64,000 nt of DNA, from contig NIVC01000012.1 of assembly GCA_002269645.1 (NCBI GenBank), positions 620,001 through 684,000 of the forward strand, given 5' to 3'. The position numbers and the translations under genes are program-made. This stretch comes from Macrostomum lignano (lineage: Eukaryota). Each line of letters starts with the position of its first letter. Positions within the stretch are counted from its first letter, which is position 1. Below, piece after piece: positions 5,816 through 43,031 of this stretch. The notes under the pieces are model-generated. The model was not told the DNA's origin and searched no databases. It saw nothing but the letters and a program-made list of their open reading frames with translations.

Positions 5816-8800
5816 ATGGCAGGGGTAAGTTTCTATGCTTCTATATGATGCTTTCCTAGATCAAGTTTGTAGTTCAGGTAGCATTAGATCCGTTGCATTG
5901 GGCTCAAAATGTATTCCGGTTATCATTTTTTCGAGTTTCATTGGAATCAGCATTTATCCAGTTTGTTGATCAAGTTGTTGAGTTGCATTGGACTCAAAAT
6001 GTCTTCAGTTTGTTGATTAAGTTGTTGAGTTGCATTGGACTCAAAATGTCTTCAGTTTTTTGATCAAGTTGTTGAGTTGCATTGGACTCAAAATGTCTTC
6101 AGTTTGTAGATCAAGCTGTTGAGTTGCATTGGACTCAAAATGTCTTCAGTTTGTAGATCAAGTTGTTGAGTTGCATTGGACTCAAAATGTCTTCAGTTTG
6201 TCGATCAAGTTGTTGAGTTGCATTGGACTCAAAATGTCTTCAGTTTGTAGATCAAGCTGTTGAGTTGCATTGGACTCAAAATGTCTTCAGTTTGTAGATC
6301 GTAGATCAAGTTGTTGAGTTCCATTACACTCAAAGTTTCATCAGTTAGTAGATTGTAGATCAAGTTGTTGAGCTGCATCAGACTCAAAATGTCTTCAGTT
6401 TGTAGATCAAGTAGTGCTTCGATAGAAACTTGAGTATATTCAGTCTCTAACTAAATAATACGATGCAACAATTTCGTCAGCCAAGTCTTAGCTAAGTAGC
6501 TTTTGTCATTGATGACGCTCCACTGTTTTTCAATCCCCAAACAGCTCAAAGGAATCTTCCTGCTGACGGTAGTCACTCTGGCGCTACTAACCGAATATTC
6601 GTCGGCGGTTTCGCCAACCAAGCTCTGTCCAAAAAGCTACACAAAGAAAGGAAAATGCATGAAGGAGCGCCGGGTCACCACTACGGTGCACTACGGCTAC
6701 GACCGCACGAGCGGCAACTGCGTCAAGCGTGAATCGCGGGTTGCACGCCGCTGCGGCCTTGGTAAGCTGCTGGAAATTGTTGCTGAATCGAACAAAATGC
6801 ATCGTTAACGACTCTGTAGCATTATAGGTTACTGGGACCAATAGTTCGCCAACACTTTGATTGCATGAATTTTTCTCTATGCCCATTGCAGACTCCGAGT
6901 CTGCGTGCCGATGCTACATCAGCGGCGATCCGCACTACGTCTCGTTCGACGGCCAGAACATGCACTTCTTCGGCAAGTGCACCTACGTTCTAACCAAGCC
7001 GGTCAGCGGGGCGAGCAAAGGCTGCAGATGGAGCATCTTGGGCAAGAACCGCATGCGCGGCGGCAGTCCCTACACCTACCTGGAGGAGCTCATCGTCAAC
7101 ATCAACGGGAAGGCCTACCGGCTGTCCCAGAAGCGGCGCCTCTACATCGGCAAGGTGTTCCACGGGCTGCCTTATCGCGTCCACAAACCGGATGTGATGG
7201 TGCAGTACATGGGCAACAAGATCGTGCTCCACTCCAGGCAGTGCGGAATCCGCGTCTCCTTTGACGGCGACGCCGAGGCCATCATTAAGGTGCAGGCCAG
7301 GTACCGCAACAAGCTGTCTGGTATCTGCGGCAACTGCGACGGCAAGCGGAATGACCTAAGGTGAGTTGATGTCATTGAAACGCGACGCAAAAGTTAATTG
7401 CCGGCAACACTTGTTGGATCCGATGAAAGCGATGAACTGCACACTTCAAGTAACAACGCTCGTAGCTAAATTTTGTCCTAAATCTATTTTTTACTCTTGC
7501 AGCCTCGTCTCTTCCCTTACTTTTCTATTCTGATCCACGATTATGAGGATACGTTAGTTTACCTGTATGTATGATTTAGCATGCTAAAGCTTGCATCAAT
7601 ACTACTGGCTTTATTATCGTTCGCTTTCAGAACTGCGTCTGGTCGCAACGTGAGCGGAATGAAGAACAAGTTCACCCTGATCGGCAACTCCTACCTGGCT
7701 CCCGGCACCTCGAAATCCTGCAGCGGCCCGAACTCTGTCCGGTGCAGCTCCGCCCAGATGTCCAAAGCCATGAAGGCCTGCAAAAGTCTCATCAACTCCG
7801 CCTCCCCGTTCCGTCGGTGCATGAAGAATGGCGGCCTTAGCCTGGACAGATACTACACGTGAGTCAGGGGAATTTTCAAATTCAGAGCTAGACAAATGGA
7901 TAGACAGATGGAAATAACTCAAGTTTGTTTAGAGATGTAGAAAAGCTGTCGCCCACGTCGGATTGCTGTACGGGTATGATGCTGATGAGGGCTAACCTTG
8001 CAGACACCAAGTGTGTCCGTGTCTGGTGACAAGAAAGTCATAGCCGATGTGCACCTCTTGTGAGTGTATGACTGCCGACGTATTCGCGTGTGTGTGTTCG
8101 GGGCTCAGGGGTCAGAGGGATGGGCATGGCTATGGCTGCGGGTCTACTATCATCTTGATTTCCAGATAGTGCCTGAAGCTGTCTAGAAAACTTTGTCATT
8201 GAAATATTAACAGTTGTCGAGAAAGGCAAATAACAGCATGGTTTTACTATAATCACTTACGACATGAATATGCGTAGACCCACCAGTCCAAATACTTTCC
8301 AAACTCTGCTTCTTCAGCGACTGCATGCAGGACATGTGCGCCGCTTCGCACTTCGCCCGGAAATCGCTGATCCGCGAGGCCCGCTGCCAGAGCTACGCCG
8401 CTGCCGCCGAGATCTGCGCCAGCAAAGGCTTCCCCAGCAAGGACTGGCGCAGCGCAGCGGGCTGCCCGCTTCGCTGCCCGAGCGGAATGCGCTACGAGTC
8501 CAACAGGAAGACCTGTCAGAAGACCTGCGAGAGCTTGTTCTTCGGCGTCAACTCTTGTCCGCAAATGCGCAGCGAGGGCTGCTTCTGCAAGCCCGGCCTC
8601 GTGCTGGACGGTAACCTGTGCGTCAAGAAGGAGGACTGTCGCTGTCTCCGTGAGTGTTGCACTGTCTACTGATATAGTAGTACTGTTGGGCGTGATTTTC
8701 TATCGTTGATGATAGATTATAGCCAGCTTCAACGATAGCTTTATAGGTAGATTGTAGTTAGCTTCAATGATTCAGATTGGCTCTTGACTGTTGTATTTAT

Positions 8801-11800
8801 ACTGTACAATCACATACATGTAGTAACGAATCGGAGTTGGAAATTGCATAGTATGAAGTTAGCCTGAAAAAATATGTGACTAATTAATGTTCGTCTCAAG
8901 TTAAACTATTCTTCTCTTTGCAGAATGCGCCGATCTTCGCAGCCCGTCAGACTGCGCCAGCTGGAAGTTAAAGGGCCGGTGCAGCAGCGAGCCGGAGGTG
9001 ATGTACAAGTACTGTCGGCTCACTTGCAACATGTGTCAGAAGCGTAAGTTTCAGTGTCAATGCTGTTAACCTGTAGCTATGGCTTGGTTTCGGATCTTAA
9101 ACTTTGATTTAAAATTTTGTCCAAACAGACAAATGCGTCGATCTGATCGCCACCAACACCTGTCTGGAGAAAAAACGAGCAGGAAAATGCGAGGACAGCT
9201 TCTACAAGGAGTTCTGCGGACTCACCTGTCATTGGAAGTCGTGCCAGTGTCCGGAAGAAGGCAGTCACTACGATCGAGGCAACTGCGAGTCTCCGCGAAT
9301 GGTTCGAAAAGTTACCAAGACAACCGTTTTCAGGTCCGTTGTCTCGGGAGTCTGCACAAAGTCTTCGGTGTTCTACTATGAACCCTGCGGAGGTAAGTCT
9401 TGCAGTGCTGTCAATGAATTCAATGAGAAGAATTATTATTTAAGGGAATCTTGCATACATCAGGGGCCGGGAAACTTTTTTACTTAAGGGCTAGATAAAG
9501 AATTCAGCTCATGACTGCGAGTCAGGTGAGAAAGGAAAGGCGAGAAATAGAATATGAGAGATAAGAGAGGCGATAGATAGGATCAGAGAAGAGATAAGAG
9601 AGCAGATAAGAGGATGGAAGAGGTGAGAGAGGAGAGGGGAGAGGAGCGAGGGGAGAGAGGAGAGAGAAGAGGGGGATTGAGAGAGGAGAAGAGAGAAAAA
9701 TAGCTGAGACAAACCTTGAGCGGGCCCCGTGAGGGCCCAGAGCACAGAGAGCACAGAGACTGTACTCTGTGTGAGCGTGTGGATGAGTGCGTGCTCGCAA
9801 ACAGTATTGGCGTGCTTGTACGAGCGTATGTGCTCAGGAGCCAGCGGACTGGGCAGAATTGTCTCAGCACTGGTTGTGGGCGTTGTGCCAAGTTGCTCAC
9901 TGCATTCCTGAAACATTTAATTTTATTTTACTTTCCCAGATTGCGAGGTGATCAACAAGGTAGTAGAGAAGAAACCGTGTAACTATTGCACCGGACAGCG
10001 GGTGATGGAGAAGATCAAACAGCACCGCGTTGGCATCTATTGCACCCGGAAGGTCAAAGAGTTTACCAAGGACTGCACTTGCGCCTTCCGTAACGGCAAG
10101 GTGAAATATCTGCACTCCGTCAAATGCAAAAATAACCACACGAAGGTGTTCATGTACAGAGAGAAGCGAGTCAGCAAGGACTGCAAGCGCTGCGACCTGG
10201 TCAAGTCTAACAAGGTGAAGCGAATCAAGTGCCAGTCGCCGCCGCCCACCTACAACCCATCGGACAAGTGCCCTCGCGGCTCCAACAGCCAGTCAACGTA
10301 CACCCGCACTATTTGTCGAGTGGTACCCGTGGATTGCGCCTGTTCAAAGAGCTGCCACAGTAAGACATTCGATTGTAGCTGCGGCTGCCTTGACCCTATC
10401 GGTCAGGATGAGTGCGAAATCTCGCGCCGCTGCGACCGTGTCGGCAAGCGCCTGGTGATCCGTTACAAGGCGGAGATTCTGGTCAAGGACAAGTACGGCG
10501 ACGGCGTTTGCACCAAAAAGTCGCCTATCGTGCACTCGGAAAAGAGACGTAGGTGCAATATTTGCCTTTTTGAAGCTCCCTTATTCTGCAAAATGTTTCC
10601 GGTTGCCTTACTACAATCTTATTTATTACCTTGACTATAAGCCCTTGACCATAGGAAAAAATATTAAATTTTCCACATTGAATGTTGTTAATAATATACC
10701 TCGAAGACATTTAGATTCTTCTTTTATACATTGTGTAATGTGTAACACTTTTTCTGAAAGAAAATATGTTTAAAATAGTTATGAGCAGCAGCACTAAGAC
10801 TTGACGTTTGCTCCTAATTGCTTTCAGCCTGCAACTACAAACGCATTGCCTATTACACCTGCGACAAGGACAAGTCGGGCAAGCTGATTGGCTGCCCAAC
10901 TACCAAGGACAAAAACTGGCCGCCCCGATGGTACAACTACAAGGAAGGCTATCTAGACGACGACTGCAACTGCAAGACTAAAAACGCGAAGAAGGTGTAC
11001 CAAGACAACTACTGCTGTTGTCCAAAGCCGTACGTCATTCGCGAGCCGAATGAGGAGTACGGCACTGGAAAGTGCGAGAAGGCCGAATCTCACTATCGCA
11101 TGCTGGTTGTGCGGATCTCCTACGTGCACAACTCGGAAAGTGGAGAGTGCGTCAAGCAGAAGTCCGAATGGTACGAGGTGTGCCGATGCGACGATAAGCC
11201 CGAACGGGAGGAGTGCATCGACAAGCCGAACTACGGCCTGTTCGTACGATACCGACCGCACTGCAAATTGGTCGACGCGAACACGTCCAACGCTCGCTGC
11301 GAATGCGGCGAGACGCTCAAATCGCGAAAAGTCTACTGCCGAAAGGCGCCGCGCTATCTTCAGCGCAAGGGCAAGTGCGACATCAAACGCGGCCGAGCAA
11401 TCTACCGCCGGGTGTACAAGGAGATCACCTACCGCAAGAAGTGCGCCTGCCGAACACGAGTTGAGCCAGAGCTGGAGCCTTGCAAGGAATGCGTTCCAAA
11501 GGAGAATAAGGAGTTGATTCCGTGTCCAAAGAACTGCGAAAACAAGATGGGACGCTGCTCTGTGAACTGCAAGAAGTATTACGTCACTTACTTTTACTCG
11601 TGGAATGACGTAAGCAAGACATGCGTCGCACGTGAGGTGAACCGAATTCCATCGCGTTGCTGCTGCAAGCCGTACTACAGGTAAAGTTTCAATTAACCTG
11701 TTTTAATATTTCTAAAGCTACTGAACAGAGAATAATCGCAAGCTTTAGTTCGAAAATGGAAGCTGGATATGATGAGTGCACGCTCGTGAAATAATAGAAT

Positions 11801-14800
11801 TGAAAAGGTCCGCCCGTTATTGACTAGCGGTTGTATATGGCCTGGAGCTTAGCTTTTGGTTCCCTTCCGGTGCCAAAGTTAAGATCCCTAATTTTTGTTT
11901 TGCTGTCCCTCTAAGGCTGAGTGAGACCTAAAGAGATGAGATTTTCGCTGGTTCTAGACTCTCTAGACCCATAATCAGGCTTCAATTTTTATTAACTCTA
12001 GCATTCATAGCATACGTGTTGCTCGATTTTTATCCATTACAGGCCACCAAACGGACCTGGTACCGACGAAAAGCAAGAGGTCGGACCGGTTTGCCACGAG
12101 TCTGGCAAGTACTGGAAGTACTACATCAACCGACAGTACCTGTGCGGTAAAAAATACAAGAAGTGCTGCCGCAAGCGTATAAAGCGATTGGTACCGATTC
12201 CCTGCAAGACTGGAAGACGAAAAAAAGTTGTCCACTGCTCGGATGGTAAAAACATCAAGAAGTTTGTGCTGACAAGAGTCTTTCTTAAAGACTGCAAATG
12301 TCAAAAGCGAGTCCGAGTCAAGCCGTGCAAGTGTCGCTGTCCGAAATCCAAGTCCTTTGTGAAATGCGAGCACGAGACCAACACGTACGCCCACGTGCAC
12401 ATCTATTACGTGATTCGCAACTGCCGATGCCACAAGCAGGTGAACACCAAGCGAAGGCGAGAGCCATGCGAGGTGACCCGCCGACGGGAGGTGTTCAACA
12501 ATTACGACGCCTGTATGTCTGGAAAAACGTCGGGCTTTATGTATACACGAAAGTTCAGCCGGTTCTACATGAAAAACTGCGTTTGTAAAGAGCAGAAGCT
12601 TGAAAAAATCAAATGCCACTGCAGTAAGTAAAAATTTCTAGACAGTTTTTTTATTTTCTTGTGGCTTCTTTTAAAATTAATTGTTAGCACGTAATGGTTA
12701 GTAGACTACGAGCGTAAATGAGTCTTTTTAATTTAATTAAGCGACCTATTGCTAATAACTACAGAGTGCCCCAAGAAGACCACCAAAACCAAGGAACGAT
12801 GCAACGGTATGACTGGTTACCTGGAGTGGACGGTGACGAAGCAGAAGAAGTCAGGCTGTCTGTGCAAGCCGAAAACTTATAAGAGAAAGCGAGAGTTCAG
12901 TAAGTTTGCAAAATAAAAGGAAGTTTTTTGTTATGGACGTTTTTGATCATTTAAAAATAGAAATTACACAAAACACCAACCTTTGCAACAATTCAGCTTG
13001 TCCAACGCAGAGAGATCGAATCGAAGTTAGCTGTAACAAGAAGACTGGCATCCGAATCACAACTCAGTTTAACTTTCGTCGTATTGACGGAACCTGCCGA
13101 TGCGGCTGGGTGAAGGTGGACGAGCGAGAGGACCGCTGCAGTACGTGTTTGCGATCGAATAATTAATTGGTTTTGCAATTGTTCTTCATTTGCGCATTAT
13201 TCAATTCTTAACCAAATTCGAATGCAGATTGTGACCTCGAGAACATTAAGATTCAACCAACCAACAAGCACAACGAGAAGCACCCGGCCTGCCGACACAA
13301 CCGCTGGTACTACGAGACGTTCGAGTACTACATCACAGTTCGCGACGGTCTGTCCGTCTGCGTCAAACGCAGCATGGCAGGCGGCAGTGACGTGCCCTGC
13401 AATCGCGACGAGAGCGTCCTGCCTGTGGGCCGGTGCAACACTCGCACAAGGCGACAGCGCTACCAGAAAATTTGGTTCGAACTGCGTGCGTGCCACTGCA
13501 CTAAACGGTCTTCTTACTTCTTCAAGCCATGCGGCTGCCCCAAGGACAAGCCGCAGAAGCGCAGAAAGGTCGACCACGAGTGCGACGGCCAAGGAAACTG
13601 GATTCTTACCTGGGAGTTCTATAGGTGGAACGAGAAATCACAGGTGTGCGAGAGGGAAGAAGAGAAGCAGACTCGTTCAGTCACTTGCAAGCCAGAGAAA
13701 AAGCAAGTGTCCAAGACCGACTGCTACAAAGGTCACTACCAAGTCACGATTCACACTAGCAAGGTTGTCGAATCCAAATGTACCTGCAAAACGGACGAGA
13801 AGATCACTGTTCTGCCGTGCGGTGAGTGACAATATCCTCTGATGGCTACAAGAGGTTAAAAGTAAGGCATTTTAAACTAACAGAAATATTAATTAGTTAA
13901 AAAACTTTGTCTTGGTTACAGTGTGCCAAACCATCACTCGAACTGGCAAGCACTGTCACGAGGACCCCAAGACGTTGCACTCTTACCGAAAAATCACTAC
14001 CATTATTCGTAAATGGAATGACAAAAAAGAGCGCTGCGAAGTTGACAAAAAAATCGTTGAAAGGCGAATTTGCAGTAAGTATTCATTGTTTTCTTTAATC
14101 TGACTATTAGTTGCACTGATTCAAATCAATTAACTTTCTGCATTTGACAGAATGTCGCAAGCGCATTTTGGCGAAGCCCGACTGCAAAGACGGAAACTGG
14201 ATAACAAAAATCACGAAGTTCGTCATGGAGCTTAACAAAAACGGCGATCGAGTCTGCACTGAAGTGGAAAAGTTCAGATCTAAGCCGAAAAGTGAGTAGA
14301 TAAAATATAAAAATTAAACAGGTCATCCTTCTAATGTGCATCTCTTGCAAACGTTTTTGTTTACAGTCTGCAACGATCAGGTTAGATTCGAGACAACAAA
14401 GAACAAGTGCAAGAACCGTCGCACTGACACCATCTACTACTCGACGAAGAAAGATGTCCTGAAACGAGCCGATTGTACCTGTGTCGAGCGCGAGATCAAG
14501 CGCAAGCCGTGCAAGTGCTGGTGCTCCGACAGGCAAGTCTTCAAATATTCCCGTTGCCAGGACGACAAAGTGACGATTAGCTACTATGCTGTCGAACGCC
14601 TTGAGGGCTGCAAATGTGTGAAGCGCCAAATTAAGAAAATGAAGACCCTATCTTGCAAGAAAGACATCGTTAAGAGAACAAGAGGCCCGTGTAACAGACG
14701 TAACAAATGCACCAGACCCATTTTTGGCTGGGTGAATGAGGAAAAGAATTGCCAGTGCGTGCCGCGAAAGTTGCCTGAGCCCATTGGTCACGAGAAGTGC

Positions 14801-23800: not shown

Positions 23801-26800
23801 TCCAGCGCATTTTCGAGAAAGGCTACAAGCAAAACTGCCAGTGCAAAAAGAAGCGACGAGTCAAAGCTGCAAATGCCGATGTCCCAAGGCGACACTTAAA
23901 CAGGAGTGCTACAAGGATGCCGTTCTGGCTATTTCGAAATCATATAAGCTTGTAAACTGCCAGTGCGTACCGATCGTGAAGAGACGCATGCGAAAGATCA
24001 GCTGCCCGAAGAACTCATACCGCGTAGTGAAGGCAAAGTCACCAAAGTGTACTGAAACACGACTGAGAATTACGTTCAAAAAGACTGCCTGCACTAAATG
24101 CACAAAGAAAGTGGAAAGGAGTGTCGATCACTGGTGCTGTCCAACTTTGCCGCCAAATATGAGAGAGAAGATCGAATGTGACAAGGACAATGCCATCAAG
24201 ATCATCCGGCGTTTCACCTACAAACTGATTGGAAAAACGCATCCAAATAGAGAGTGCAAAATGACTGAAACAAAAGAAACTCAGAACGTATTTTGCGATA
24301 ATCTTAGTCGCGCAGAAAAGGTTGTTAGCTCCTGCAAGAAAAAAGAAGGCTTCACTGATCGAGTTAGAAGAGTTCGCTACTATTCTGTTTCATTCAATGG
24401 CGAAGGGTGCACCTGCGTGTGGTCACGGCACTACAGATGGGACGTCTGCGGCTGCAGGCCAGACCGCACTGTGGAATCAGCCTGCAATCACAAGACTTGC
24501 ATGCAGGACATTCTGCACTACTCGTATCGCATGGTGAAGAACTATCGCGCTAGAAATGTTTGCAAAGAATCTATTAGGCGTACTAAGCGCCGCTGCGGAT
24601 GCTGCAAGAAGGACTACTCTAAAGGTCCGGACTGTGATGGAGTACGCACCTTTTTGACGTACTATTATACATTCAGGTGGAACTACAAAACTAGGACATG
24701 CATCAAGCATCGCCGGGTCGAAAGGAAAAAGGTTGAATGCGGAGAGAGGAATGTGGTCCTGACATCTAAACCCAATCGAGCCACTTGTACGTACACCATT
24801 ACCCGCATCAGAAACTCCATAAAGAAGTGTGAGTGCAAGAAAAAGATTGTGTCAAAGAAGCCATGCTATTTCTGCTGCAGACCTAGAAAGGTTAAAACTG
24901 TACGATGCATAAATCACAACATCATTGAGACTACGGTGGCCAAAGTTGTTCCAGTTGGATGTAAGTGTCGAAAAGGCAAGACAAGAAAGACACTGAAAAC
25001 AGTTAAATGCCGAAAACGGCACGTTGTCAGATGTTACAGTCGCAATTCCCGAACCTGCAAGCAGAAATGCTGTAGATTTGAATGCAAAGTACGAAACTGT
25101 AAGAAAACGAAGCCACTCATCAGGGTTAAGTGCTGGCATCGGGTGTACAAATGCTGCAATTCTGGGCTTGGTAGAATTAAGAAGTGCGACGAAAAGAAGA
25201 GAAGGCACGTGTACACTACCAGCTGGCATGTCTGGCGCCCGTGGAGATGCGACAGGCACACGAAGACCAGAGTGCAGCCAGTGGTTTGCAACCAGCGCCT
25301 GTCTATCAATCGTGGAGCCTGTAACATTAAGGGTCGACGCTCTGGCTACCTTCAGGAGGTGAAGCGCAAGGATATTCACAGAAGAGAAGTGTATGCTGAA
25401 GGCTGTCAATGCAAGGATACAACTAAGGCGAAATACTCTATCTGCGCTTGCAAAGGATACCATGACAAGGAGGTCTGTACAGCAAACACTCTCATAACCT
25501 ATCGCCAGTCCTGGGTGATCAAGCAGCTGAGAAACGGCAACACCTATTGCTCGCCAATTACCACTGTTATTACCAGCAAAGGAACCAAGTGTAAGAAGCC
25601 CTACTATAGAAAGATTGGCACCTGCAAGAAAAATGGCATGCAGACTATTCAGTTGGTTACCGAGTACGCTGATAAGTGCGCCTGCAAGAGTACGGAAACT
25701 CAATTCGAGATGGTTTGCAGTTGTCCCAAGCCTGAGAAAGACAAGCGCTGCGAGTATGAAAGGGGCAGAATGATTACAACTGTGAAAACCTACATCAAGG
25801 TGTGCCCTAGCACGCATTCCTGTCACTGCAAGAGCTCCAAGGAAACCGTTGTCCGTGATATCAAATGCCCAAAGAAGTCGCGAACCTGCCACAAAGGCCT
25901 GGTTGTTACTATCACACACAAGCGGCATGGATGCAAGTGCATTGTAAGCACTGTTTTGTCTAATTGCGTTGTGTATTTGTGTGGCTGTATTTTCTCGATT
26001 TTAAGCATATATATAGTTTAAGTACATTTGAGCTATCCATTGTTGCGTAACAGTGCAAGTAAACGTAGGCACAAAAGCCGTCGTGCACTACAGGTCATTT
26101 TCTAGCTATCCATTTTATCCAGTCAGTACGTACTCGCATGTCATTCTAGCATACGAGTCTACTTGTAAAACCCTTGTAGCATCAAAAATGTTTAGAGTCG
26201 TAAAATAGAGACAAAGACCTACACTGCGATAGAAACAAACTGTCAAACGTTTAGATTAAAATTTGATCATACTCTTACTTTTTTATTTTTTATTTCTCAT
26301 TTATTTTTCTTATTCAACCTACCTTAATTCTAGACTCGTCGCACGGAAAAATCCGTGCCATCTTGCACCGCCTGCACCGACATCGGCGAAAACTGCTCGG
26401 AGCAGAAACGTAGAGGCTATTGCGAGACCAACAAGGAGACGAAGGAAACCTGCAAGGAGACTTGCGGCTTCTGCAACGTTAAGCCGTGCCCGAAACCGAA
26501 AGTCCTGCAGTTTAAACCTCAGCGTGGAATCAGTATTAAGTCGGATCGAAGATTCAAGCGATATTTCTACATCAAAACACTTGAGAATAGGAGAGAGTCG
26601 GCTTGCATCAGAGCTTGCAAAGAGTCTCCTATTTGTAGATCATTCGATTACGACCTGCGTTCAAAAAGCTGCGTTTTAAACAGAGTTCGAATGGACGACA
26701 TCGAGACCAGAGGCTACACATGGGATGTCAGCCAGCAGAAATCTCGATACAGCGTCCACTACAACAGGGTATGCCAGGACGAGTGCGAGTGCAAAGTGAA

Positions 26801-29800
26801 GCCTATGAACAAAGGCAAATGCGTTTGCCGCGGTACCGGTGTTGAGCGCTGGTGTGCCAGAAGATTTGCCATCCTGCAGTACCACGAGACCAACGATGGA
26901 AGATGCGTGCTTGGTGAAGATTCTAGATACGTTGTCGCTGATTGTGACGAAACTTGCGTTGATGTTGGTAAAGACTGCGCCAAGAATAAGCATCTCTGCG
27001 ATCGTGACATTGTGTTTAGCCGCCGATGCGATCGCACCTGCCGCAAGGTTTGCCGCTGCGGTGAGGACAGGAAGCAGCACTTTAAGGGTCTTTGTACGCA
27101 ACGCGCCAACGGACAATGGACCATCTACCAGAGATTTGTCAAGTACCAACGAACGGATTGCGGTTTGTGCGAAATGGCTGTTGAAGAGTCCTACATAGGG
27201 TGCACACCGGGTAAGTTCACTATTTTCAACTTATAGTCAAAATATAAACGGATACTAATCAATAAAATGCTTTTAAAATAAACTTCAGAGCCTTGTGACA
27301 AGACCCCGATCAAGGTTGTTGGTGACTGTATCAAGGGCGTGAAGCTTATTTCGATCTATTCAAGAAGGCGTCACAGGGATGGTAGCTGCCCTGTCACTCT
27401 GGTCAAAGTCATCAAGGAGGATTGCATTAAGTGCTGCAAGGAAATCATGAAGGATGTTGGTCGCTGTCAGAGGTACAAGAGCAGAGGTGGCTACTACAGA
27501 CCAGTCACTCACTCTTGGTACGTCAAGCGAAAAGGAAACTGTGAACTGAAAATGGAAGTCCGCTGGTTCCGCTGCAGCAAGATTGGTAAGTTCCAATACT
27601 CAGTAAAGTGTTAGCCTGTAGATTGAAATTTTCCTTTAAAAATGAACGCTTTGTCCCTGTTTTAAACCGAGTTAATACTGATGAGAAAGCTAAAGTAATT
27701 CGAGTCTCCTGGTCAATTTGTAGCCTGTCCTCGTGACTTCACCACTAACGGCAAGTGCGAATTCGGCCGCCGACTGACCTACAACGTCTTCTACACTGTT
27801 GATAGCGAGCGAAACTGCGTCAGACATGCGAAGGCCTACAAGACCTACTGCAAACAGAAGTCTCGACCCGAGTGCAATGATGCCTACATCGATCTGCTCT
27901 CTCCACGCCAGTGTCTGCAGATTAAGAAGAAGGGCATGTGCGTTAGAAATGAGGGTGCCAGTCTCTGCGCCAGAACATGCAACTTCTGCGTTATCAAGAA
28001 GTTCTGCACAAAGAAGATGGGCCCAGTTGACTTGGTCCTCACTGTCGATGCCTCCGACTCAACCGAGTTAGTTACATTTGAGAACTACGTTGTACCATTC
28101 TTAAGGGCGATTGTCGGAAAGATGGGTCGAACTGTTAAAGTGTCCGTCATTCAGTACGGTTCATCACCAAAGACAGTATTCAGGCTTGGTGACGAGGTGT
28201 ATCCACGCAACATGATGACGAGGATCAATCACATGGACTTAAGCGGTGGTTCCTCATACACTGCTCGGGCCTTGTATGCTGCCTCAGAAGAGTTCAGGCT
28301 GAGAGGCAGACGTGCAGCCCATAAGGTATCCATCCTAGTTACAGACGGTAGAAACAGTGGCAAAATGTTGATTAAGCCGGCAGTGAAGAGACTAAAACGC
28401 TATGCTGATACTTCCATCGTTGTTGGCATAGGACGCCACGTGAGCGAGAACGAAATGCGTCTAATTGCATCCGATTACGCCTCAGACGAAATCAGGATAT
28501 CGAACTTTAGACAGCTAGCTGGAATTGTTGACAAGGTGGTGAGAAAAATCTGTCCTAAGGGAGGCAAGCCAGTCAGGCCCAAGCCCGGACCAAAACCCGG
28601 ACCCAAGCCTGGCCCACGACCAGGACCAAAACCAGGACCGACGCCAGTACCAGGACCCAAACCGGGACCGAAACCAGGACCAAAGCCGGGACCAAAGCCA
28701 GGACCAAAGCCGGGACCAAAGCCGGGACCATCAAATGGCATTGATCTTTACTTCGTTGTTGACTCAAGCAGTTCTGTAACTTCAGATGAGTTCAACTTGA
28801 TCAAGCAATACATTAAGTCATATGTCAACTCTATCGTAGTCTCGCCAGAAGACACTAGAGTCAGTATTATTCAATACTGGGATCAAGTAACAACGACAGT
28901 CGACATCGAAGAATACAGAACCGTGAATGATCTTATCCCTGCGATTGAGAACTTGAAGTATTTCAACGGTCAAAGATCCGTTCTTGGTGATGCGCTAATC
29001 CTCACATCCAAAATGATTGCAAGGAATGAGCGAAACGTACCAAAGGTTGTTATTGTCATCGCTGGAACACCGCCAACAAACGGGGAAGCAATCAAAGACG
29101 CTGCGCCGAAGCTTATCTACTATGCTGATAAGGTTATTGCTATTGGCGTCAAGAACCACATGCCCAAGACTGAATTGCTGCTGATTTCTACTACCGTGGA
29201 GGACACTATCATTATTGAAGAGTACTCGAAACTGCACGACACCATCCCTGTTATCATCGAGAAGACCAAGATCAGCGAGCGAAAGAAGCGACCTGCTCCT
29301 GGTGGAACTGGTCAAGACATCGTGTTCATTGTGGACAGCAGTGACTCAATTGGCCAGACCAATTGGAATGTGTACATCAAGGGCCTGCTTAAAGTAATCA
29401 CTGAATACGTTGTTGTCTCACCATCAGACACTAGGTTCGCACTTATCCAGTTCTCGAAGCCAGCACAGGTTGTATTCGGCTTCAAAGACTACACTGACGG
29501 AGAAAGTCTTCGAAGGGCTATCAATAAGCTGAAGCCATACCATAGGAGCACCTACCCGTCAATCGGAAACGCACTGAAAGTTGCGGTTGACTATGTCAAG
29601 ACGAAGAAGCGTTCCGGTGTGCCAACTTCAGCCATTATTATCACTGCTAGCACTTCCTCACCCAGAGTTGGGAAGCCGATTGAAGAGGTCATCACAGAAG
29701 TCCAAGAGTTGTTCGACTACATTATCCCGGTGGCCATCCGTAACCGAGTGGACTTGCCCGACCTAGAGAAGCTTGCCAAGCCGGATTCGTCGATGATTAT

Positions 29801-32800
29801 CACCACAGAGGAGCTAGATGAATTGATCCCGCTATCTAAGCGAATCATTTCTCTTACGACAGTTCGGCTAAGGCAGAGGCCACTTGTTTGCAGAAAACGA
29901 AGTCGCGGTGACTTTATCTTTGTCATTGGAGCTAGCTCTAAAACTATTAAGCATCGATACTTTGAAGAAATCAAGAGCTTTATTAAAGGTTTCTCATCTG
30001 AATACGAGATCGATGAGGGTGCATCCAGAGGTGGAGTCTTCATTCTGGGATCAAGCTCTCAGAAGGAAATTGGATTGAACATGTTTAGAAGCGACATAGA
30101 CTTTAGGGCAAGCATCAATAGACTATCTGCTCCGAGCTCCAGCACCGTGCACTTCCGATCTGGAATGGAAAAAGTTATGCGCTATGCCAGACGAAGCCGA
30201 ACAAAGAAGAGACCAGCTACAATGATTTACATTTCGGATGGCAGTGAAGTAACGAAGAATGTTTACTCTGTGGCTCCTAAGCTCGCGTCTTCAATCCGAA
30301 AGACAATTGTTGTTGGTCTTAAACCAACAATAAAGAGAAGAGCACTTCTAAGAACAATGGTCACGGATGTTCGTAATGATTTTGTAAATGTACGTAGAAT
30401 CCGAGATCTTAGACGAGTCGCGAAAACAATCTCTGGAATGACTTGCACTAGAACTAAAAAAGCAGCTAAAGTTAAGAAGACAGAGCCAGGTGTTAAGCGC
30501 ATCATTATGAAAGAAAGCAAGCGCTCAGTCACCAAAAACGGCTCTAAAAGGCAAAAGACAAAGACCACCAAACGAAAAACTGTCACAAAGAAGCAGACAA
30601 AGAGACAGAAAAAGACGACAGTGAAAATCGAGGGCCAGGGAGGCAAAAATCGAAAGCGTATTTCCAAGAAGATTATTAACAAGAATCGAAGAAAGATGAA
30701 AAAGAAGATGTCAGTTATCTACGGAACAACAATCATTAGGGGTTCGCCACGCAGATACATCAAGAAAATTAAATTCGGCAAACGATGGTTTAAGACTCGG
30801 GTAATTCGCGTCGTCAAAGGACATGGAAAGAGACGTCGAGCGAGACGATATCTGCAGATCAGATACAGGAAAAAATGGATTCGATTCAATGTCAAGCGAA
30901 AAAGAGTCCAGTTCAGACGCCGATGGTACAAAATCCGAGTTACACGTCGAAGATTTTTTATTAGAATGAGAAGAAGATGGCGTGCGCTCCAAACAGCAAG
31001 AGGAAAGGCATTTGTGACTATCAAGGGTCGAAAGCGCATCCTGACTAACAGGAAGCGACGCCACCGAAGACAAAGGAAGCATCAACGTCATATCAAAATT
31101 AGATACACCACTAAGATCGTAAAGCACAAAAAGATACGAGTTCCGTCAAACGTAAAACTCGGTTTCAAAAAGGTTCCAGTGAAAGTCGTTTCAAGAAACG
31201 GCGCAAAAAAAGGGAAAACGTTTAAAACATTGATTCGCATCGGTCGTCGTTGGGTGAGATTCAGTGCTAGACAAAGGCGAGTAAGAATCGGAAAAGGATG
31301 GTTCCGAGTGACCTACAGAAGAAAAGGACCAGGTGTTGTGCATCGAAGAAAATGGTATAAGATTAGGGTGACAAAGAAAGGTTTCAAGATTCGCGTGGCA
31401 AGAAAATGGCGAGGGCTAATTACTACTCGGCGAAAGCTCTATATTCAATATAGAGGAAAAATCTCCCGAGTTGGAAAGCCACTTGTCGTTCGCTCGCTGA
31501 ATGGAAAATTTAAGAAGAGAAACAATAAAAAGCGAGTTAGCAAGAACCCAAAGCGGCGACATGGTCGATCTAGAAAAAACAAAAGGCGCCACCGGAAAAC
31601 AAATAAGAAGATAAATAGCAAAAAGCCCAAACGCCAGAGAAAAATCACAAAAATCAGTCGCCGAAGCTTTACCAAGGTGAGCGGACGACCTCCGATCCGA
31701 ATCCGTTTCACCATGAGAACGATTAACGGCAAGAAGGTTCGCGTACCCAAAACAGTCAGACTTGGCAGGAAGGTCGTTCGAGTGAAGATCCAACCGCAAA
31801 TCATAGTTAGACGAGGAAAGCGCATCGTCAAAAAAAGAGTCCTTGTTCGCGTTCAAAAGCGCTGGCACCCGTTCAGCGTTCGTCGCAAAAAGATCAAGGT
31901 TGGAAAGACGTGGGTTACCGCATACTACAGGAAAAAAGGCTTCGGACTCAGATACAAGCGTAGATGGGTCAAAACACGCATCACAAGGAGAAAAATCAGA
32001 GTTCGTGTCTACGGAAAGTGGAGACAAGTCATCACTAAGAGACGCAAAATTTACATTCGCGGGCGCAAAAACAAGCGATACTACACTGGAATAAAAATTC
32101 CCAAGCATCTAAGAGGACGCAGACGTAAAAGATTATCAAAAAAGCTTCGCGGAAGCTTTACCAAGGTGAGCGGACGACCTCCGATCCGAATCCGTTTCAC
32201 CATGAGAACGATTAACGGCAAGAAGGTTCGCGTACCCAAAACAGTCAGACTTGGCAGGAAGGTCGTTCGAGTGAAGATCCAACCGCGAATCATAGTTAGA
32301 CGAGGAAAGCGCATCGTCAAAAAAAGAGTCCTTGTTCGCGTTCAAAAGCGCTGGCACCCGTTCAGCGTTCGTCGCAAAAAGATCAAGGTTGGAAAGACGT
32401 GGGTTACCGCATACTACAGGAAAAAAGGCTTCGGACTCAGATACAAGCGTAGATGGGTCAAAACACGCATCACAAGGAGAAAAATCAGAGTTCGTGTCTA
32501 CGGAAAGTGGAGACAAGTCATCACAAAGAGACGCAAAATTTACATTCGCAGGCGCAAAAACAAGCGATACTACACTGGAATAAAAATTCCCAAGCATCTA
32601 AGAAGACGAAGCCGAAAGATCCGCTTCCGCAAAGGAAAAGGCGTCGTAAGACGATCACGAAAGATCCGCTTCCGCAAAGGGAAAAGCGTCGTGAAACGAT
32701 CTCGAAAGATCCGCTTTCGCAAAGGAAAACGCGTCGTGAGACGATCACGAAAGATCCGCTTCCGCAAAGGAAAAGGCGTCATGAAACGATCACACAAGAT

Positions 32801-33719
32801 CCGCTTCCGCAAAGGAAAAGGCGTCGTAAGACGATCACGAAAGATTCGCTTCCGCAAAGGAAAAGGCGTCATGAGACGATCTCGAAAGATCCGCTTCCGC
32901 AAAGGAAAACGCGTCGTGAGACGATCACGAAAGATCCGCTTCCGCAAAGGAAAAGGCGTCATGAGACGATCTCGAAAGATCCGCTTCCGCAAAGGAAAAC
33001 GCGTCGTGAGACGATCACAAAAGATCCGCTTCCGCAAAGGAAAACGCGTCGTGAGACGATCACGAAAGATCCGCTTCCGCAAAGGAAAAGGCGTCATGAG
33101 ACGATCTCGAAAGATCCGCTTTCGCAAAGGAAAACGCGTCGTGAGACGATCACGAAAGATCCGCTTCCGCAAAGGAAAACGCGTCGTGAGACGATCACGA
33201 AAGATCCGCTTCCGCAAAGGAAAAGGCGTCGTGAAACGATCACGAAAGATCCGCTTCCGCAAAGGAAAACGCGTCGTGAGACGATCACGAAAGATCCGTT
33301 TCCGCAAAGGAAAAGGCGTCGTGAAACGATCACGAAAGATCCGCTTTCGCAAAGGAAAAGGCGTAGTGAAAAAGCTTGCTGGCAGACACTCGAAGCACAA
33401 GGCCCGAGCTGCCTTCGTGAAGAGAAAATGGTATCACACGAAAGGAGGAGTTGTCGTTGAGAACGGTCGCAAAATTGTCCTGAATCGACGCGGAAAGATG
33501 CGCCGCAGCAGCAGTAGTCGCAAAATCATGACAAGTTCCCATAGCAGCCAGTCGCACAGAATTAAATTTCACAAGTCAGGAAACGCCTCCTCTGGCTCGT
33601 CCTCCAGCAGCAGCATGACACACGAAAGCCACTCGGTTGTAATGGGCAAGCCGAAAGTGCACGACTCTGGTTGGATAACCACTCATAAAAGCTCGTCTAC
33701 CTCCTCGAGCAAGACGTAA
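5816..33719 (+). CDS. Giant secreted multidomain protein, 28 coding exons, ~7,516 aa after correcting two 1-nt frameshifts: SP-VWD-C8-TIL-2xShKT-(Cys/Lys/Arg module)x~100-ShKT-PAN-ShKT-ShKT-vWA-(PGPK)n-3xvWA-Arg/Lys repeats-Ser/His tail
   Basis: GT-AG exons with compatible phases: 5816-5824, 6545-6761, 6892-7360, 7631-7858, 8318-8649, 8924-9043, 9129-9392, 9940-10548, 10828-11680, 12043-12623, 12765-12899, 12997-13140, 13228-13821, 13922-14074, 14151-14291, 14367-15512, 15606-15893, 15990-16601, 16699-17118, 17215-18000, 18076-18207, 18321-19460, 19553-19705, 19972-20415, 20535-25943 (frame shifts at ~21694 and ~23864), 26334-27210, 27289-27585, 27724-33719. The N-terminus MAG|LKGIFLLTVVTLALLTEYSSA is signal-peptide-like. 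The spliced CDS is 22,551 nt with two bases restored. Confidence 0.88.
5968..6412. repeat. Minisatellite, 47 bp unit (GATCAAGTTGTTGAGTTGCATTGGACTCAAAATGTCTTCAGTTTGTA), ~9 copies, in intron 1 of the giant gene
   Basis: Tandem copies are directly visible. Confidence 0.95.
6892..8649 (+). other. VWD-C8-TIL cassette of the giant protein (exons 3-5)
   Basis: VWD: CYISGDPHYVSFDG...CTYVL...LSGICGNCDG...IGNSY. C8: CMQDMC...RCQSYAAAAEICASKG...DWRSAAGC. TIL: CPSGMRYE...CQKTC...EGCFCKPGLVLDGNLCVKKEDC. These are standard mucin/vWF-family signatures. Confidence 0.92.
8924..9250 (+). other. Two ShKT domains (exons 6 and 7; not in the ORF track)
   Basis: CADLRSPSDCASWKLKGRCSSEPEVMYKYCRLTCNMC and CVDLIATNTCLEKKRAGKCEDSFYKEFCGLTCHWKSC fit the six-Cys ShKT pattern CxD...C...C...CxxTCxxC. 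Confidence 0.85.
9520..9705. repeat. GA-rich low-complexity tract in intron 7 of the giant gene
   Basis: Almost pure A/G run. The antisense Ser/Leu/Pro ORFs are artefacts of it. Confidence 0.85.
26370..27990 (+). other. ShKT - PAN/Apple - ShKT ... ShKT segment of the giant protein
   Basis: ShKT: CTDIGENC...GYC...CKETCGFC. PAN: ESACIRACKESPICRSFDYDLRSKSCVLN. ShKT: CVDVGKDC...CDRTCRKVC. ShKT: CNDAY...C...GMC...CARTCNFC. Confidence 0.8.
28018..30450 (+). other. Four vWA domains, with a (PGPK)n linker (28564-28731) after the first
   Basis: Beta1/MIDAS motifs are VDLVLTVDASDS, IDLYFVVDSSSS, QDIVFIVDSSDS and the degenerate GDFIFVIGASSK. vWA-typical motifs include VSVIQY, VSIIQY and FALIQF, and ILVTDG. 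Confidence 0.9.
31663..32602 (+). repeat. Near-identical coding tandem duplication, period 489 bp (163 aa), in the basic tail
   Basis: GAAGCTTTACCAAGGTGAGCGG occurs at 31663 and 32152. ATAAAAATTCCCAAGCATCTAAGA occurs at 32091 and 32580. Confidence 0.95.
32603..33370 (+). repeat. Coding 45-bp tandem repeat, 17 copies of (R/K)RSRKIRFRKGK(G/R)V(V/M)
   Basis: Copies counted in the 27936..33719 translation. Confidence 0.97.
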
Positions 33720-33975
33720 ATTTAATGTTGGCAAGCTACAGGACTAGCCTAAATGATTGTGGCTAACAAAAAAAACGATAAACTCGAATTCTAATACTTT
33801 TTAAACAGTTTTTTGGGTGTCGGTTGAGAACTTAAGAAGCTTTAACGTATCCAAGTTTTCCTCTGATTCCAATTTCAATTTTATTTTATTATTATTGTTC
33901 CAGTTATTTGTGTTTTGATGACGGGTAATGGGAAGCAGATCGATTTCGGAAAATTTCAAAGTTGGAACAAAGTTA

Positions 33976-33981
33976 AATAAA
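33976..33981 (+). terminator. Candidate polyadenylation signal of the giant gene
   Basis: AATAAA ~255 nt after the stop codon in an AT-rich 3' UTR. Motif match only. Confidence 0.4.

Positions 33982-37479: not shown

Positions 37480-43031
<5,552 letters not shown>

What the first reader, a model, noticed from the sequence alone, without database searches (positions are those of the whole stretch)
5816..33719. ~7,500-aa secreted polycationic protein with an unusual architecture: candidate glue, cement or matrix component
Seen in sequence: the fragmented ORFs across 28 kb splice into one reading frame. It combines a mucin-type VWD-C8-TIL cassette, five ShKT domains, ~4,600 aa of Cys/Lys/Arg modules, a PAN domain, four vWA domains and ~1,000 aa of Arg/Lys repeats. 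Established knowledge: VWD-C8-TIL drives polymerisation in mucins and vWF, vWA domains bind matrix ligands, and very large Lys/Arg-rich VWD-containing secreted proteins are described from flatworm and echinoderm adhesive systems. Unlike gel mucins, it has no Pro/Thr/Ser glycosylation domain; a disulfide-rich cationic rod occupies that position. I do not recognise this domain order from any named protein. Inference: a polymerising cationic structural secretion that complexes with polyanions (adhesive, egg or cocoon cement, mucus or rhabdite material).
Basis: partly seen in the sequence, partly recalled or inferred. Interest (0 to 1): 0.92.

Follow-up and report, generated by a model that had tools for sequence, protein, structure and literature searches.

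The report
Giant cationic secreted flatworm gland protein
The window holds a real 28-exon gene of the flatworm Macrostomum lignano that encodes a roughly 7,500-residue, strongly positively charged, cysteine-rich secreted protein built largely from an undescribed 47-residue module; it resembles the worm's known glue proteins in kind but is a different gene, and its role is untested.

Summary
A + strand gene runs from ATG 5816 to the stop at 33717-33719. It has 28 coding exons and 27 GT-AG introns, and it encodes 7,516 aa (about 877 kDa mature, pI 10.1, net charge about +1330). They look like homopolymer assembly errors. The organism is Macrostomum lignano. UniProt A0A1I8GE37, an uncharacterised partial model, matches the first 2,045 aa.

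The domain inventory is confirmed:
- signal peptide
- one FCGBP-like VWD-C8-TIL unit
- five ShKT-like units (two pass Pfam)
- a 4,581-aa array of a 47-aa Cys/Lys/Arg module
- PAN
- four vWA
- a 985-aa Lys/Arg repeat region

The module has no Pfam or PDB relative. AlphaFold2 folds it confidently as a three-stranded beta unit. Across 1.84 billion representative proteins it appears almost only in uncharacterised M. lignano proteins.

The gene is neither Mlig-ap1 nor Mlig-ap2. The most likely role is a disulfide-stabilised polycationic matrix component of a gland secretion. The tissue is unknown, and a mucin-like polymerising machinery is not present. This is a new variant of a known kind, of moderate interest.

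The parts
5816..33719 (+). Whole coding span of the gene. 28 coding exons: 5816-5824, 6545-6761, 6892-7360, 7631-7858, 8318-8649, 8924-9043, 9129-9392, 9940-10548, 10828-11680, 12043-12623, 12765-12899, 12997-13140, 13228-13821, 13922-14074, 14151-14291, 14367-15512, 15606-15893, 15990-16601, 16699-17118, 17215-18000, 18076-18207, 18321-19460, 19553-19705, 19972-20415, 20535-25943, 26334-27210, 27289-27585, 27724-33719.
   Evidence: Gene model. All introns are GT-AG. Exons 1-17 match UniProt A0A1I8GE37.
5816..6607 (+). Start codon in a Kozak-like context (GCCATGG), 2 nt after a CAG acceptor-like site. Signal peptide MAGLKGIFLLTVVTLALLTEYSSA, split by intron 1 (5825-6544).
   Evidence: This is the only hydrophobic window in the protein.
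6626..6757 (+). First copy of the 47-aa Cys/Lys/Arg module, lying upstream of the VWD domain.
   Evidence: Module HMM score 19.6-27.6.
6912..8639 (+). Single D assembly: VWD (6912-7643, with GDPH at 6924-6935), C8 (7779-8468) and TIL (8475-8639), spread over exons 3-5.
   Evidence: Pfam VWD 9.8e-26, C8 4e-10, TIL 1.6e-7. Closest solved structures are FCGBP, MUC5AC and VWF.
8926..9244 (+). ShKT-like units 1 (8926-9036) and 2 (9134-9244).
   Evidence: Unit 1: Pfam ShK 9e-10. Unit 2: six-Cys pattern only, no Pfam hit.
9392..25943 (+). Array of a 47-aa module, C-x9-C-x~22-C-x12-C with optional extra Cys that give CxC motifs. About 80-95 copies, aa 547-5127, exons 8-25; 9.8% Cys, 25% K+R, net +725.
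   Evidence: Iterated HMM. Composition. No Pfam family at E<=1. AlphaFold2 pLDDT 92.5, three beta strands. No PDB fold or sequence match.
21694..21715 (+). Frame break 1 inside exon 25. One base is missing relative to an open frame; the likely site is the GGG run in CAGAGGGCG.
   Evidence: Open frame of 1,167 nt before the break and 2,148 nt after it.
23845..23870 (+). Frame break 2 inside exon 25. One base is missing; the likely site is the A5 run in TGCAAAAAGAAG, or a few codons downstream.
   Evidence: Open frame of 2,094 nt after the break.
26373..27053 (+). ShKT-like 3 (26373-26474), PAN/apple domain (26487-26699), an unassigned Cys-rich stretch, and ShKT-like 4 (26955-27053).
   Evidence: Pfam ShK 4e-4 (21.3 bits) and PAN_1 2e-7. 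Unit 4 is recognised by Cys pattern only.
27294..27989 (+). Three further 47-aa modules (27294-27854, across exons 27-28) and ShKT-like 5 (27873-27989).
   Evidence: ShK scores 18.9 bits, just under the cut-off.
28026..30443 (+). Four vWA domains (28026-28550, 28740-29273, 29313-29861, 29907-30443), with a (PGPK)n linker at 28557-28730. The MIDAS motif DxSxS is present in vWA1-3 and lost in vWA4.
   Evidence: Pfam VWA 1.2e-88 in 4 stretches. DxSxS sites. Linker repeat. Closest relatives are collagen VI-like vWA arrays at about 22% identity.
30444..33398 (+). Lys/Arg repeat region (aa 6426-7410; K 20%, R 25%, D+E 0.3%, net +441). It holds four copies of a 140-163-aa unit (30678-31091, 31092-31541, 31665-32153, 32154-32642; the last two 98% identical in DNA), then 16.8 copies of a 45-nt unit encoding RKIRFRKGKGVVRRS (32613-33369).
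   Evidence: AlphaFold2 predicts the 163-aa unit as all-beta hairpins with pLDDT 70.7. No PDB match.
33399..33719 (+). Basic, Ser-rich C-terminal tail and TAA stop. An AATAAA signal lies at 33976.

Best explanation
The locus is one gene of Macrostomum lignano. It encodes a secreted structural protein of about 877 kDa and carries two single-base frame breaks that are probably assembly errors. From the N-terminus the protein has:
- a signal peptide
- one FCGBP/mucin-type D assembly
- ShKT units
- a rod of about 80-95 small, disulfide-stapled, three-stranded beta modules rich in Lys and Arg
- a PAN domain
- four vWA domains, three with metal-binding motifs
- an almost purely cationic 985-aa beta-hairpin repeat region

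I propose that it is made in an exocrine gland cell and stored charge-neutralised with a polyanionic partner such as a sulphated glycan. After release it would act as the cohesive or matrix component of a secretion (egg cement, rhabdite or mucus material, or an accessory to the adhesive). Network formation would use three routes:
- electrostatic complexation through the Lys/Arg regions
- protein-protein contacts through the vWA, PAN and D-assembly domains
- disulfide bonding

What is shown: the gene structure, the secretion signal, the domain set, the charge and the predicted module fold. What is inferred: single-transcript status, expression in a gland, the polyanion partner and the cohesive role.
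For: Gene structure:
- The model has 27 consensus GT-AG introns and matches an independent UniProt model over 2,045 aa.
- Exons 26-28 have no start codon or signal peptide of their own, and the exon 26 reading frame opens exactly at the acceptor. One gene is therefore the simplest reading.

Protein properties:
- The signal peptide is the only hydrophobic span. Net charge is about +1330, there are 546 Cys, and only 10 N-glycosylation sequons.
- The D assembly resembles FCGBP, MUC5AC and VWF.
- There are four vWA domains, three with DxSxS.

Evidence that the gene is maintained:
- The module array is diverged (mean column identity 17-25%) yet stays open for 13.7 kb of coding sequence.
- The module is predicted to fold with pLDDT 92.5.

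Precedents in the same animal and in relatives:
- Mlig-ap1 is a giant Lys/Arg-rich VWD-C8-TIL cohesive protein. Its function is blocked by heparin, and detachment is blocked by free polycations (PMC6410801).
- A shell/cement-gland-specific 16-kb transcript, RNA815_13, encodes a secreted VWD plus vWA-array protein (PMC4490696).
- Planarian rhabdites are scaffolded by sulphated GAGs with an uncharacterised protein content (PMC5450325).
Against: - There is no expression, proteomic or localisation evidence for this gene, and no paper describing it was found.
- All ten adhesive-organ transcripts from earlier screens were assigned to ap1 or ap2, so a role in the duo-gland glue is unlikely.
- Two frame breaks sit in exon 25. 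If they are real, the protein would be truncated.
- There is only one D assembly and no cystine knot, so covalent polymerisation is not established.
- The vWA and PAN domains fit an extracellular-matrix protein equally well.
Confidence: 0.5

Rival explanations
1. The protein is an extracellular-matrix or basement-membrane structural protein that stays in the body, a collagen VI-, hemicentin- or SCO-spondin-like scaffold, rather than an exported gland secretion.
For: The best database matches of the C-terminal third are collagen VI and XII-type vWA arrays. PAN, vWA and VWD domains are common in matrix proteins. No tissue data exist.
Against: No collagen triple helix, EGF, TSP1 or LDLa domains were found. 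Identity to collagen VI is only about 22% and confined to vWA. Among the proteins compared here, a net charge of +1330 and a 985-aa region with 45% K+R and 0.3% acidic residues have a parallel only in the secreted glue protein Mlig-ap1, not in the matrix proteins matched.
Confidence: 0.15
2. The protein is a defensive polyprotein. The 15-aa RKIRFRKGKGVVRRS repeats and other Lys/Arg units would be cut at dibasic sites into cationic antimicrobial peptides, and the ShKT units would act as toxin-like modules in surface mucus.
For: There are 16.8 near-identical 15-aa cationic repeats flanked by RR/KR and five ShKT-like units. In limpet mucus an ShKT-bearing protein was proposed to be antimicrobial (PMC7333891).
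Against: The peptide repeats make up about 3% of an 877-kDa protein dominated by structural domains. The larger Lys/Arg units are predicted to fold as beta hairpins rather than as spacers. Dibasic sites occur everywhere, so they do not mark specific cleavage. No homology to a known antimicrobial peptide precursor was found.
Confidence: 0.1
3. The locus is a recently inactivated pseudogene, or a non-functional copy in a duplicated genome, and the two frameshifts are real.
For: Two frame breaks lie within 2.2 kb of each other in exon 25. No gene model from the NCBI-annotated assembly appeared in any of the three searches.
Against: After each break the new frame stays open for more than 2 kb (P about 1e-15 each) and continues to encode modules. 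There are no other stops or broken splice sites in 22.5 kb of coding sequence. Both breaks sit at or near homopolymer runs. The N-terminal third differs by only 2 of about 2,033 residues from the UniProt copy.
Confidence: 0.08
4. The span holds two or more adjacent genes, for example exons 1-25 and exons 26-28, or produces alternative isoforms rather than one 7,516-aa product.
For: The exon 25 donor is one of the weaker ones (PWM 3.3), and its junction is one of only two phase-0 introns. Read-through of that donor adds a 25-aa hydrophobic tail and a stop at 26019-26021. The UniProt model stops after exon 17.
Against: Exons 26-28 lack an in-frame ATG with a signal peptide, and the exon 26 frame opens at its acceptor. 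The 47-aa modules continue on both sides of the junction. Reading phase is compatible throughout.
Confidence: 0.12

Closest known systems
Mlig-ap1, the cohesive protein of the M. lignano duo-gland adhesive (Wunderer et al. 2019, PMC6410801)
   Same: Same species. Both are giant secreted proteins with a VWD-C8-TIL unit, a Cys-rich domain core and very long Lys/Arg repeat regions. The experimentally supported mechanism for Mlig-ap1 is electrostatic: heparin blocks attachment and polycations block release.
   Different: Mlig-ap1 is 5,407 aa. Its KR regions flank both ends of a core of C-type lectin, VWD-C8-TIL and 17 EGF domains. The window protein has no lectin or EGF. It has ShKT, PAN, four vWA and a 4.6-kaa module array, and its KR repeats lie only at the C-terminus. 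None of the published ap1 or ap2 epitope peptides occurs in it. It is a different gene with no detectable homology outside the D assembly.
FCGBP / zonadhesin-type D assemblies (PDB 8rde, 8r0t); MUC5AC, MUC2, VWF
   Same: The VWD-C8-TIL unit aligns over its full length at 28-35% identity and carries the GDPH motif at the start of VWD.
   Different: These proteins have many tandem D assemblies (FCGBP), or D1-D2-D'D3 plus a cystine knot and PTS domains (mucins, VWF). The window protein has one D assembly, no cystine knot and no PTS domain.
Collagen VI alpha-3-like vWA arrays
   Same: Tandem vWA domains; these are the best database hits for the last exon.
   Different: Identity is only about 22% and limited to vWA. 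There is no triple-helical Gly-X-Y region. The PGPK linker has a 4-residue period.
M. lignano RNA815_13, a shell/cement-gland-specific 16,136-nt transcript (Arbore et al. 2015, PMC4490696)
   Same: Same species. It is a very long secreted protein with an N-terminal VWD-like domain and vWA-array BLAST hits, and its gland-specific expression was shown by in situ hybridisation.
   Different: It is a different gene. Its 5' sequence and probe primers are absent from the window. Whether it contains the 47-aa module is unknown, because only 400 nt are published in the supplement held.
Uncharacterised M. lignano proteins carrying the same 47-aa module (A0A1I8HBH7, A0A1I8HCF7, A0A1I8JML5, A0A267FTF9/PAA76252.1)
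   Same: They are built from tandem copies of the same Cys/Lys/Arg module.
   Different: They are 25-30% identical to the window protein, lie at other loci (for example NIVC01000834.1), and are partial models with no known function.
Sea star Sfp1 and other VWD/C8/TIL-bearing aquatic adhesive proteins
   Same: They are large, Cys-rich, secreted, carry VWD-C8 and have a cohesive role (as summarised in PMC6410801 and PMC8621496).
   Different: They have different accessory domains (galactose-binding lectin, EGF). They have no Lys/Arg repeat region or 47-aa module array. This comparison rests on the papers' descriptions; no sequence comparison was made here.

Membership tests
Gel-forming mucin / VWF-type polymerising glycoproteins | N-terminal D1-D2-D'D3 set (three or more VWD assemblies) that drives multimerisation | tested here: not met
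   Pfam finds a single VWD-C8-TIL unit in the whole protein.
Gel-forming mucin / VWF-type polymerising glycoproteins | C-terminal cystine-knot (CTCK) dimerisation domain | tested here: not met
   No cystine-knot family appeared in the Pfam scan of the last exon. The C-terminal 1,900 aa hold only 3 Cys.
Gel-forming mucin / VWF-type polymerising glycoproteins | Long central Pro/Thr/Ser O-glycosylated domain | tested here: not met
   The highest PTS density is 41 per 100 aa, in the 58-aa PGPK linker. The central region is the Cys/Lys/Arg array, with S+T+P at 16.5%.
FCGBP / zonadhesin-type D-assembly proteins | VWD-C8-TIL unit with sequence similarity and a GDPH motif | tested here: met
   phmmer against PDB: FCGBP summed E 2e-180, best stretch covering the full unit. 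Identity to FCGBP and zonadhesin is 28-35%. GDPH lies at aa 87-90.
FCGBP / zonadhesin-type D-assembly proteins | Tandem array of several D assemblies | tested here: not met
   Only one D assembly is present.
Mlig-ap1 (flatworm cohesive adhesion protein) orthologue or identity | Core of C-type lectin + VWD-C8-TIL + multiple calcium-binding EGF domains | tested here: not met
   No lectin or EGF family passes in any Pfam scan. The ap1 architecture is taken from PMC6410801.
Mlig-ap1 (flatworm cohesive adhesion protein) orthologue or identity | Published repeat peptides (SRKPRRKNRKSRKP, KNNKRRVRKARKNN, KSRKVN) | tested here: not met
   None is present in the 7,516-aa model.
Mlig-ap1 (flatworm cohesive adhesion protein) orthologue or identity | Very long Lys/Arg-rich repeat regions with an extreme positive charge | tested here: met
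   985 aa with K 20%, R 25%, D+E 0.3% and net +441. The match is in composition only; no sequence homology was found.
Mlig-ap1 (flatworm cohesive adhesion protein) orthologue or identity | Expression in adhesive gland cells and presence in footprints | not testable with these tools
   No expression data are accessible. Earlier screens assigned all ten adhesive-organ transcripts to ap1 or ap2.
Collagen VI-like vWA-array matrix proteins | Tandem vWA domains | tested here: met
   Four vWA domains, Pfam 1.2e-88.
Collagen VI-like vWA-array matrix proteins | Collagen triple-helical Gly-X-Y region | tested here: not met
   No Collagen family hit. The only Pro/Gly repeat has a 12-nt (PGPK) period.
ShKT (SXC) domain proteins | Six-Cys ShK fold signature | tested here: met
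   Two units pass the Pfam cut-off (39.4 and 21.3 bits against 20.9), one scores 18.9 bits, and two show the Cys pattern only. UniProt names the partial model 'ShKT domain-containing protein'.

The most novel reading that the evidence does not exclude
The 47-aa Cys/Lys/Arg unit is a previously undescribed extracellular domain family, essentially confined to macrostomid flatworms. It would form a disulfide-stapled cationic beta-rod. This 877-kDa protein would be the polycation that condenses sulphated glycans in a flatworm secretory granule (rhabdite or egg-cement granule) and sets on release as a polyelectrolyte complex. That would make it a second glue or matrix system in M. lignano, independent of Mlig-ap1 and Mlig-ap2.
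Probability: 0.25. Interest if true: 0.75.

Novelty: new variant of a known kind. Interest (0 to 1): 0.5.

Why it matters
M. lignano is the best-developed model for reversible underwater adhesion. Its two known glue proteins were defined from fragmentary transcripts that had to be joined using the genome.

This locus adds a third giant polycationic VWD-bearing secreted protein. Public databases hold it only as a truncated, unnamed model.

It also defines a compact, confidently folding, disulfide-rich cationic module with no Pfam or PDB relative. That module could be expressed and tested as a building block for polyelectrolyte adhesives or coatings.

If the protein proves to be the protein partner of sulphated glycans in rhabdites or egg cement, it would give a molecular handle on secretions whose protein composition is unknown. 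If it is instead a matrix protein or a dead copy, the finding reduces to a curated gene model.

Tried and rejected
Rejected: every other intron is at least 75 nt, it would delete the closing CxC of a module, and with a 40-nt minimum the model prefers a frameshift.
- A model extension past the stop, through a 531-nt 'intron' (33716-34246) that adds 9 codons. Rejected as an artefact of local scoring. TAA at 33717 followed by AATAAA at 33976 is the simpler end.
- My first donor choices for exons 2, 16 and 27. Replaced by stronger GTAAG donors, two of which are confirmed by the UniProt model.
- The 36-nt intron inside VWD in the UniProt model. Rejected: with the 12 residues retained, Pfam VWD aligns over positions 1-155 of 156.
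- Attempts to fetch an independent assembly of the locus to check the frame breaks. Exact look-ups of P0001, the terminal ORF, P0017 and P0019 found nothing. No NCBI gene model for this gene appeared in the searches.
- Pfam at E<=1 on 3,145 aa of the module array gave only sub-threshold noise, including CXCXC.
- Foldseek against PDB for the module and the KR unit gave nothing at E<=0.001. A profile search against PDB sequences gave nothing.
- Antisense ORFs inside the gene have no Pfam family.
- Literature searches for this gene, for ShKT, vWA, cement-gland or rhabdite proteins in Macrostomum, and for supplements of in situ screens gave no match. RNA815_13 looked promising but is a different gene. 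Lengerer et al. 2018 is not in the held library.

Full report
**What is in the sequence**

Stop-to-stop ORFs on the + strand between about 5.8 and 33.7 kb are dense, long and rich in Cys, Lys and Arg. I built a splice-aware dynamic-programming model. It was trained first on the obvious ORFs and then on its own splice sites. It gives one + strand gene:
- a 9-nt first coding exon (ATGGCAGGG|GTAAGT)
- 28 coding exons and 27 GT-AG introns of 75-720 nt
- stop at 33717-33719, with an AATAAA 257 nt downstream

Twenty-two of the 27 introns are phase 1, and most fall just before a Cys codon at a module boundary. This is the pattern expected of a gene grown by duplication of module exons.

The product is 7,516 aa. 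The mature protein is about 877 kDa, with pI 10.1, 14.4% Lys, 11.3% Arg, 7.3% Cys and a net charge of about +1330.

The 5.4-kb exon 25 (20535-25943) changes frame twice. The first change is at about 21,694-21,715, in or next to CAGAGGGCG. The second is at about 23,845-23,870, in or next to TGCAAAAAGAAG. Each break is cured by adding one base.

After each break the new frame stays open for more than 2 kb (chance about 1e-15 each) and goes on encoding the same modules. There is no other stop or damaged splice site in 22.5 kb of coding sequence. I therefore read the breaks as homopolymer indel errors of a long-read assembly. I could not obtain an independent copy of the locus to prove it.

**Organism and independent support**

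A database search with 1,503 aa of the module array returned a single protein, UniProt A0A1I8GE37. It is named 'ShKT domain-containing protein', comes from Macrostomum lignano, is 2,037 aa long and is 99% identical. It matches my model from the signal peptide to exon 17, apart from two substitutions and one 12-aa skip that I judge a mis-called mini-intron. It corrected three of my first donor choices.

The rest of the gene has no counterpart in the 5.8-billion-protein collection. Two thirds of the protein is therefore absent from that collection.

**Domain inventory**

| Feature | Result |
|---|---|
| VWD | Pfam 9.8e-26 |
| C8 | Pfam 4e-10 |
| TIL | Pfam 1.6e-7 |
| PAN_1 | Pfam 2e-7 |
| vWA | four domains, Pfam 1.2e-88; DxSxS in the first three, lost in the fourth |
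| (PGPK)n linker | 58 aa, between vWA1 and vWA2 |
| ShKT-like units | five carry the six-Cys pattern; two pass Pfam, one is just under, two are pattern only |

The D assembly is closest to those of FCGBP, then MUC5AC and VWF, and to zonadhesin-like proteins at 28-35% identity. It starts with GDPH. The signal peptide is the only hydrophobic span. There is no PTS domain and there are only ten N-glycosylation sequons.

**The Cys/Lys/Arg array**

Seeding an HMM with the small single-module exons and iterating tiles aa 547-5127 with a 47-aa unit. Extra copies lie before the VWD domain and between PAN and vWA.

Core Cys sit at consensus positions 1, 11, 34 and 47 (61-92% occupancy). Optional Cys at positions 32 and 45 create the frequent CxC motifs. 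The loops are Lys/Arg-rich, and the middle is a Thr/Val/Ile/Tyr beta stretch. Copies are old and diverged, with mean column identity of 17-25%.

On six-frame translations the profile hits 78 times inside the gene on the + strand. It hits four times, weakly, in the rest of the window and on the other strand.

No Pfam family matches even at E<=1. AlphaFold2, given 28 paralogous copies as the alignment, predicts a three-stranded antiparallel beta unit with mean pLDDT 92.5. Foldseek finds no PDB match better than E = 0.37, and a sequence profile finds none.

An exhaustive HMMER scan of 1.84 billion representative proteins with the module profile found seven proteins:
- the UniProt partial model of this gene
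- four other uncharacterised M. lignano proteins
- one unnamed UniParc entry
- one marginal metagenome ORF

The M. lignano paralogues are 25-30% identical to this protein and lie at other loci. As far as current data show, the module is a lineage-restricted, undescribed domain.

**The Lys/Arg region**

Residues 6426-7410 are 20% Lys, 25% Arg and 0.3% acidic, with net charge +441. The region has internal order:
- four copies of a 140-163-aa unit, the last two 98% identical in DNA
- then 16.8 copies of a 45-nt unit encoding RKIRFRKGKGVVRRS

AlphaFold2 predicts the 163-aa unit as a run of beta hairpins. Confidence is only moderate and varies between models (best pLDDT 70.7, range 43-71). There is no PDB counterpart. 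The region may therefore be structured rather than a random coil, but this is weak evidence.

**Surroundings**

The antisense ORFs within the gene have no family match. The neighbours have no evident functional link to the gene:
- a Ras-like GTPase exon upstream
- a kindlin gene and an ankyrin-repeat gene downstream on the other strand
- many tandem repeats

**What it is not**

It is not Mlig-ap1 or Mlig-ap2, the two characterised glue proteins of this worm. Ap1 is 5,407 aa, with KR regions at both ends of a C-lectin/VWD-C8-TIL/17-EGF core. Ap2 is 14,794 aa, with LDLa, TSP1 and 221/255-aa repeats (PMC6410801). None of five published epitope peptides occurs in this protein.

It is not a gel-forming mucin or a VWF-type polymeriser. 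It has one D assembly, no cystine knot and no PTS domain.

It is not a collagen, because there is no Gly-X-Y helix.

It is not the shell/cement-gland transcript RNA815_13, whose 5' sequence and primers are absent from the window.

**How it most likely works**

Shown: a secretion signal, a very large disulfide-rich modular body, protein-binding domains (vWA with MIDAS motifs, PAN, a D assembly), and an extreme, spatially concentrated positive charge.

Established for the nearest analogue, Mlig-ap1: the Lys/Arg regions give cohesion, heparin or fondaparinux abolish attachment, and free polycations block release.

Reported for planarian rhabdites: sulphated GAGs form the scaffold around an uncharacterised protein content (PMC5450325).

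Inference: this protein is stored charge-neutralised with a polyanion in a gland granule. After release it acts as a cohesive or matrix polycation, and vWA, PAN, D-assembly contacts and disulfides add specific cross-links.

Which gland is open. The earlier assignment of all adhesive-organ transcripts to ap1 and ap2 argues against the duo-gland glue. The existence of a cement/shell-gland VWD plus vWA giant shows that such proteins are used elsewhere in the animal. I put 0.5 on the gland-secretion matrix reading. The remainder is split among matrix protein, peptide precursor, pseudogene and multi-gene readings.

**Novelty and verdict**

The kind is known: giant, Cys-rich, Lys/Arg-rich, VWD-bearing secreted proteins of flatworm glands. 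This member has a new architecture and is built mostly from a module with no described relative. Public databases hold only its N-terminal third, unnamed, and the literature I could search does not describe it.

It is a solid, well-delimited candidate for experimental follow-up in an established model, not a categorically new system. Its score of 0.92 is too high for a protein with no functional evidence, and I give 0.5.

Noticed in passing
window 25944-26021: If the exon 25 donor (GTAAGC at 25944) is not used, the frame reads on into a 25-aa hydrophobic tail (VSTVLSNCVVYLCGCIFSILSIYIV) and a stop at 26019-26021. This could be a shorter isoform of about 5,150 aa with a membrane-anchor-like end, or simply intron sequence.
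   Followed up: partly
window 5892-6412: Intron 1 of the gene is largely a 47-nt tandem repeat (10.9 copies, 86% matches).
   Followed up: no
window 61101-62065 and 63014-64000: Two arrays of a 4-nt repeat, each about 1 kb, lie in opposite orientation ((ATCT)241 and (GATA)247) and flank about 950 bp. They account for the sharp GC-skew flip at the end of the window.
   Followed up: no
window 39198-40505: A 21-nt tandem repeat of 62 copies at 90% identity. It gives long spurious ORFs on both strands.
   Followed up: no
window 50343-52241 (-) and 57088-59772 (-): Two unrelated genes lie downstream on the other strand. One is a kindlin (Kindlin_2_N 8e-32, FERM_M, PH) with a 633-aa open exon. The other is an ankyrin-repeat protein with an 895-aa open exon.
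   Followed up: partly
window 3131-4037 (+): A 30-nt tandem repeat (9.6 copies, 3131-3419) is followed immediately by an exon encoding the C-terminal two thirds of a Ras-family GTPase domain (Pfam Ras 5.5e-13, 3495-4037). This is probably the last exon of the upstream neighbour.
   Followed up: partly
locus L002 (M. lignano GCA_002269645.1, NIVC01000834.1:97864-128124): A paralogous locus carries at least 14 copies of the same 47-aa module on one strand, spread over about 12 kb. It is annotated only as a 616-aa hypothetical protein (PAA76252.1), which suggests a second large under-annotated gene of this family.
   Followed up: partly
locus L001 (JGI metagenome 3300078644, contig Ga0620977_001561): A metagenome ORF (P0020, 670 aa) has repeated four-Cys units (C-x9-C-x~20-C-x11-C) separated by acidic linkers. 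It is a marginal match to the module profile (E 8e-4 summed), with no single hit scoring 5 or more. Its source organism is unknown.
   Followed up: partly
PMC4490696 supplements (transcript RNA815_13): The shell/cement-gland-specific M. lignano transcript RNA815_13 is 16,136 nt long. It starts with a signal peptide and a VWD-like domain containing a His/Lys-rich insert, and it hits vWA-array proteins. This is another giant secreted protein that appears not to have been characterised further.
   Followed up: partly
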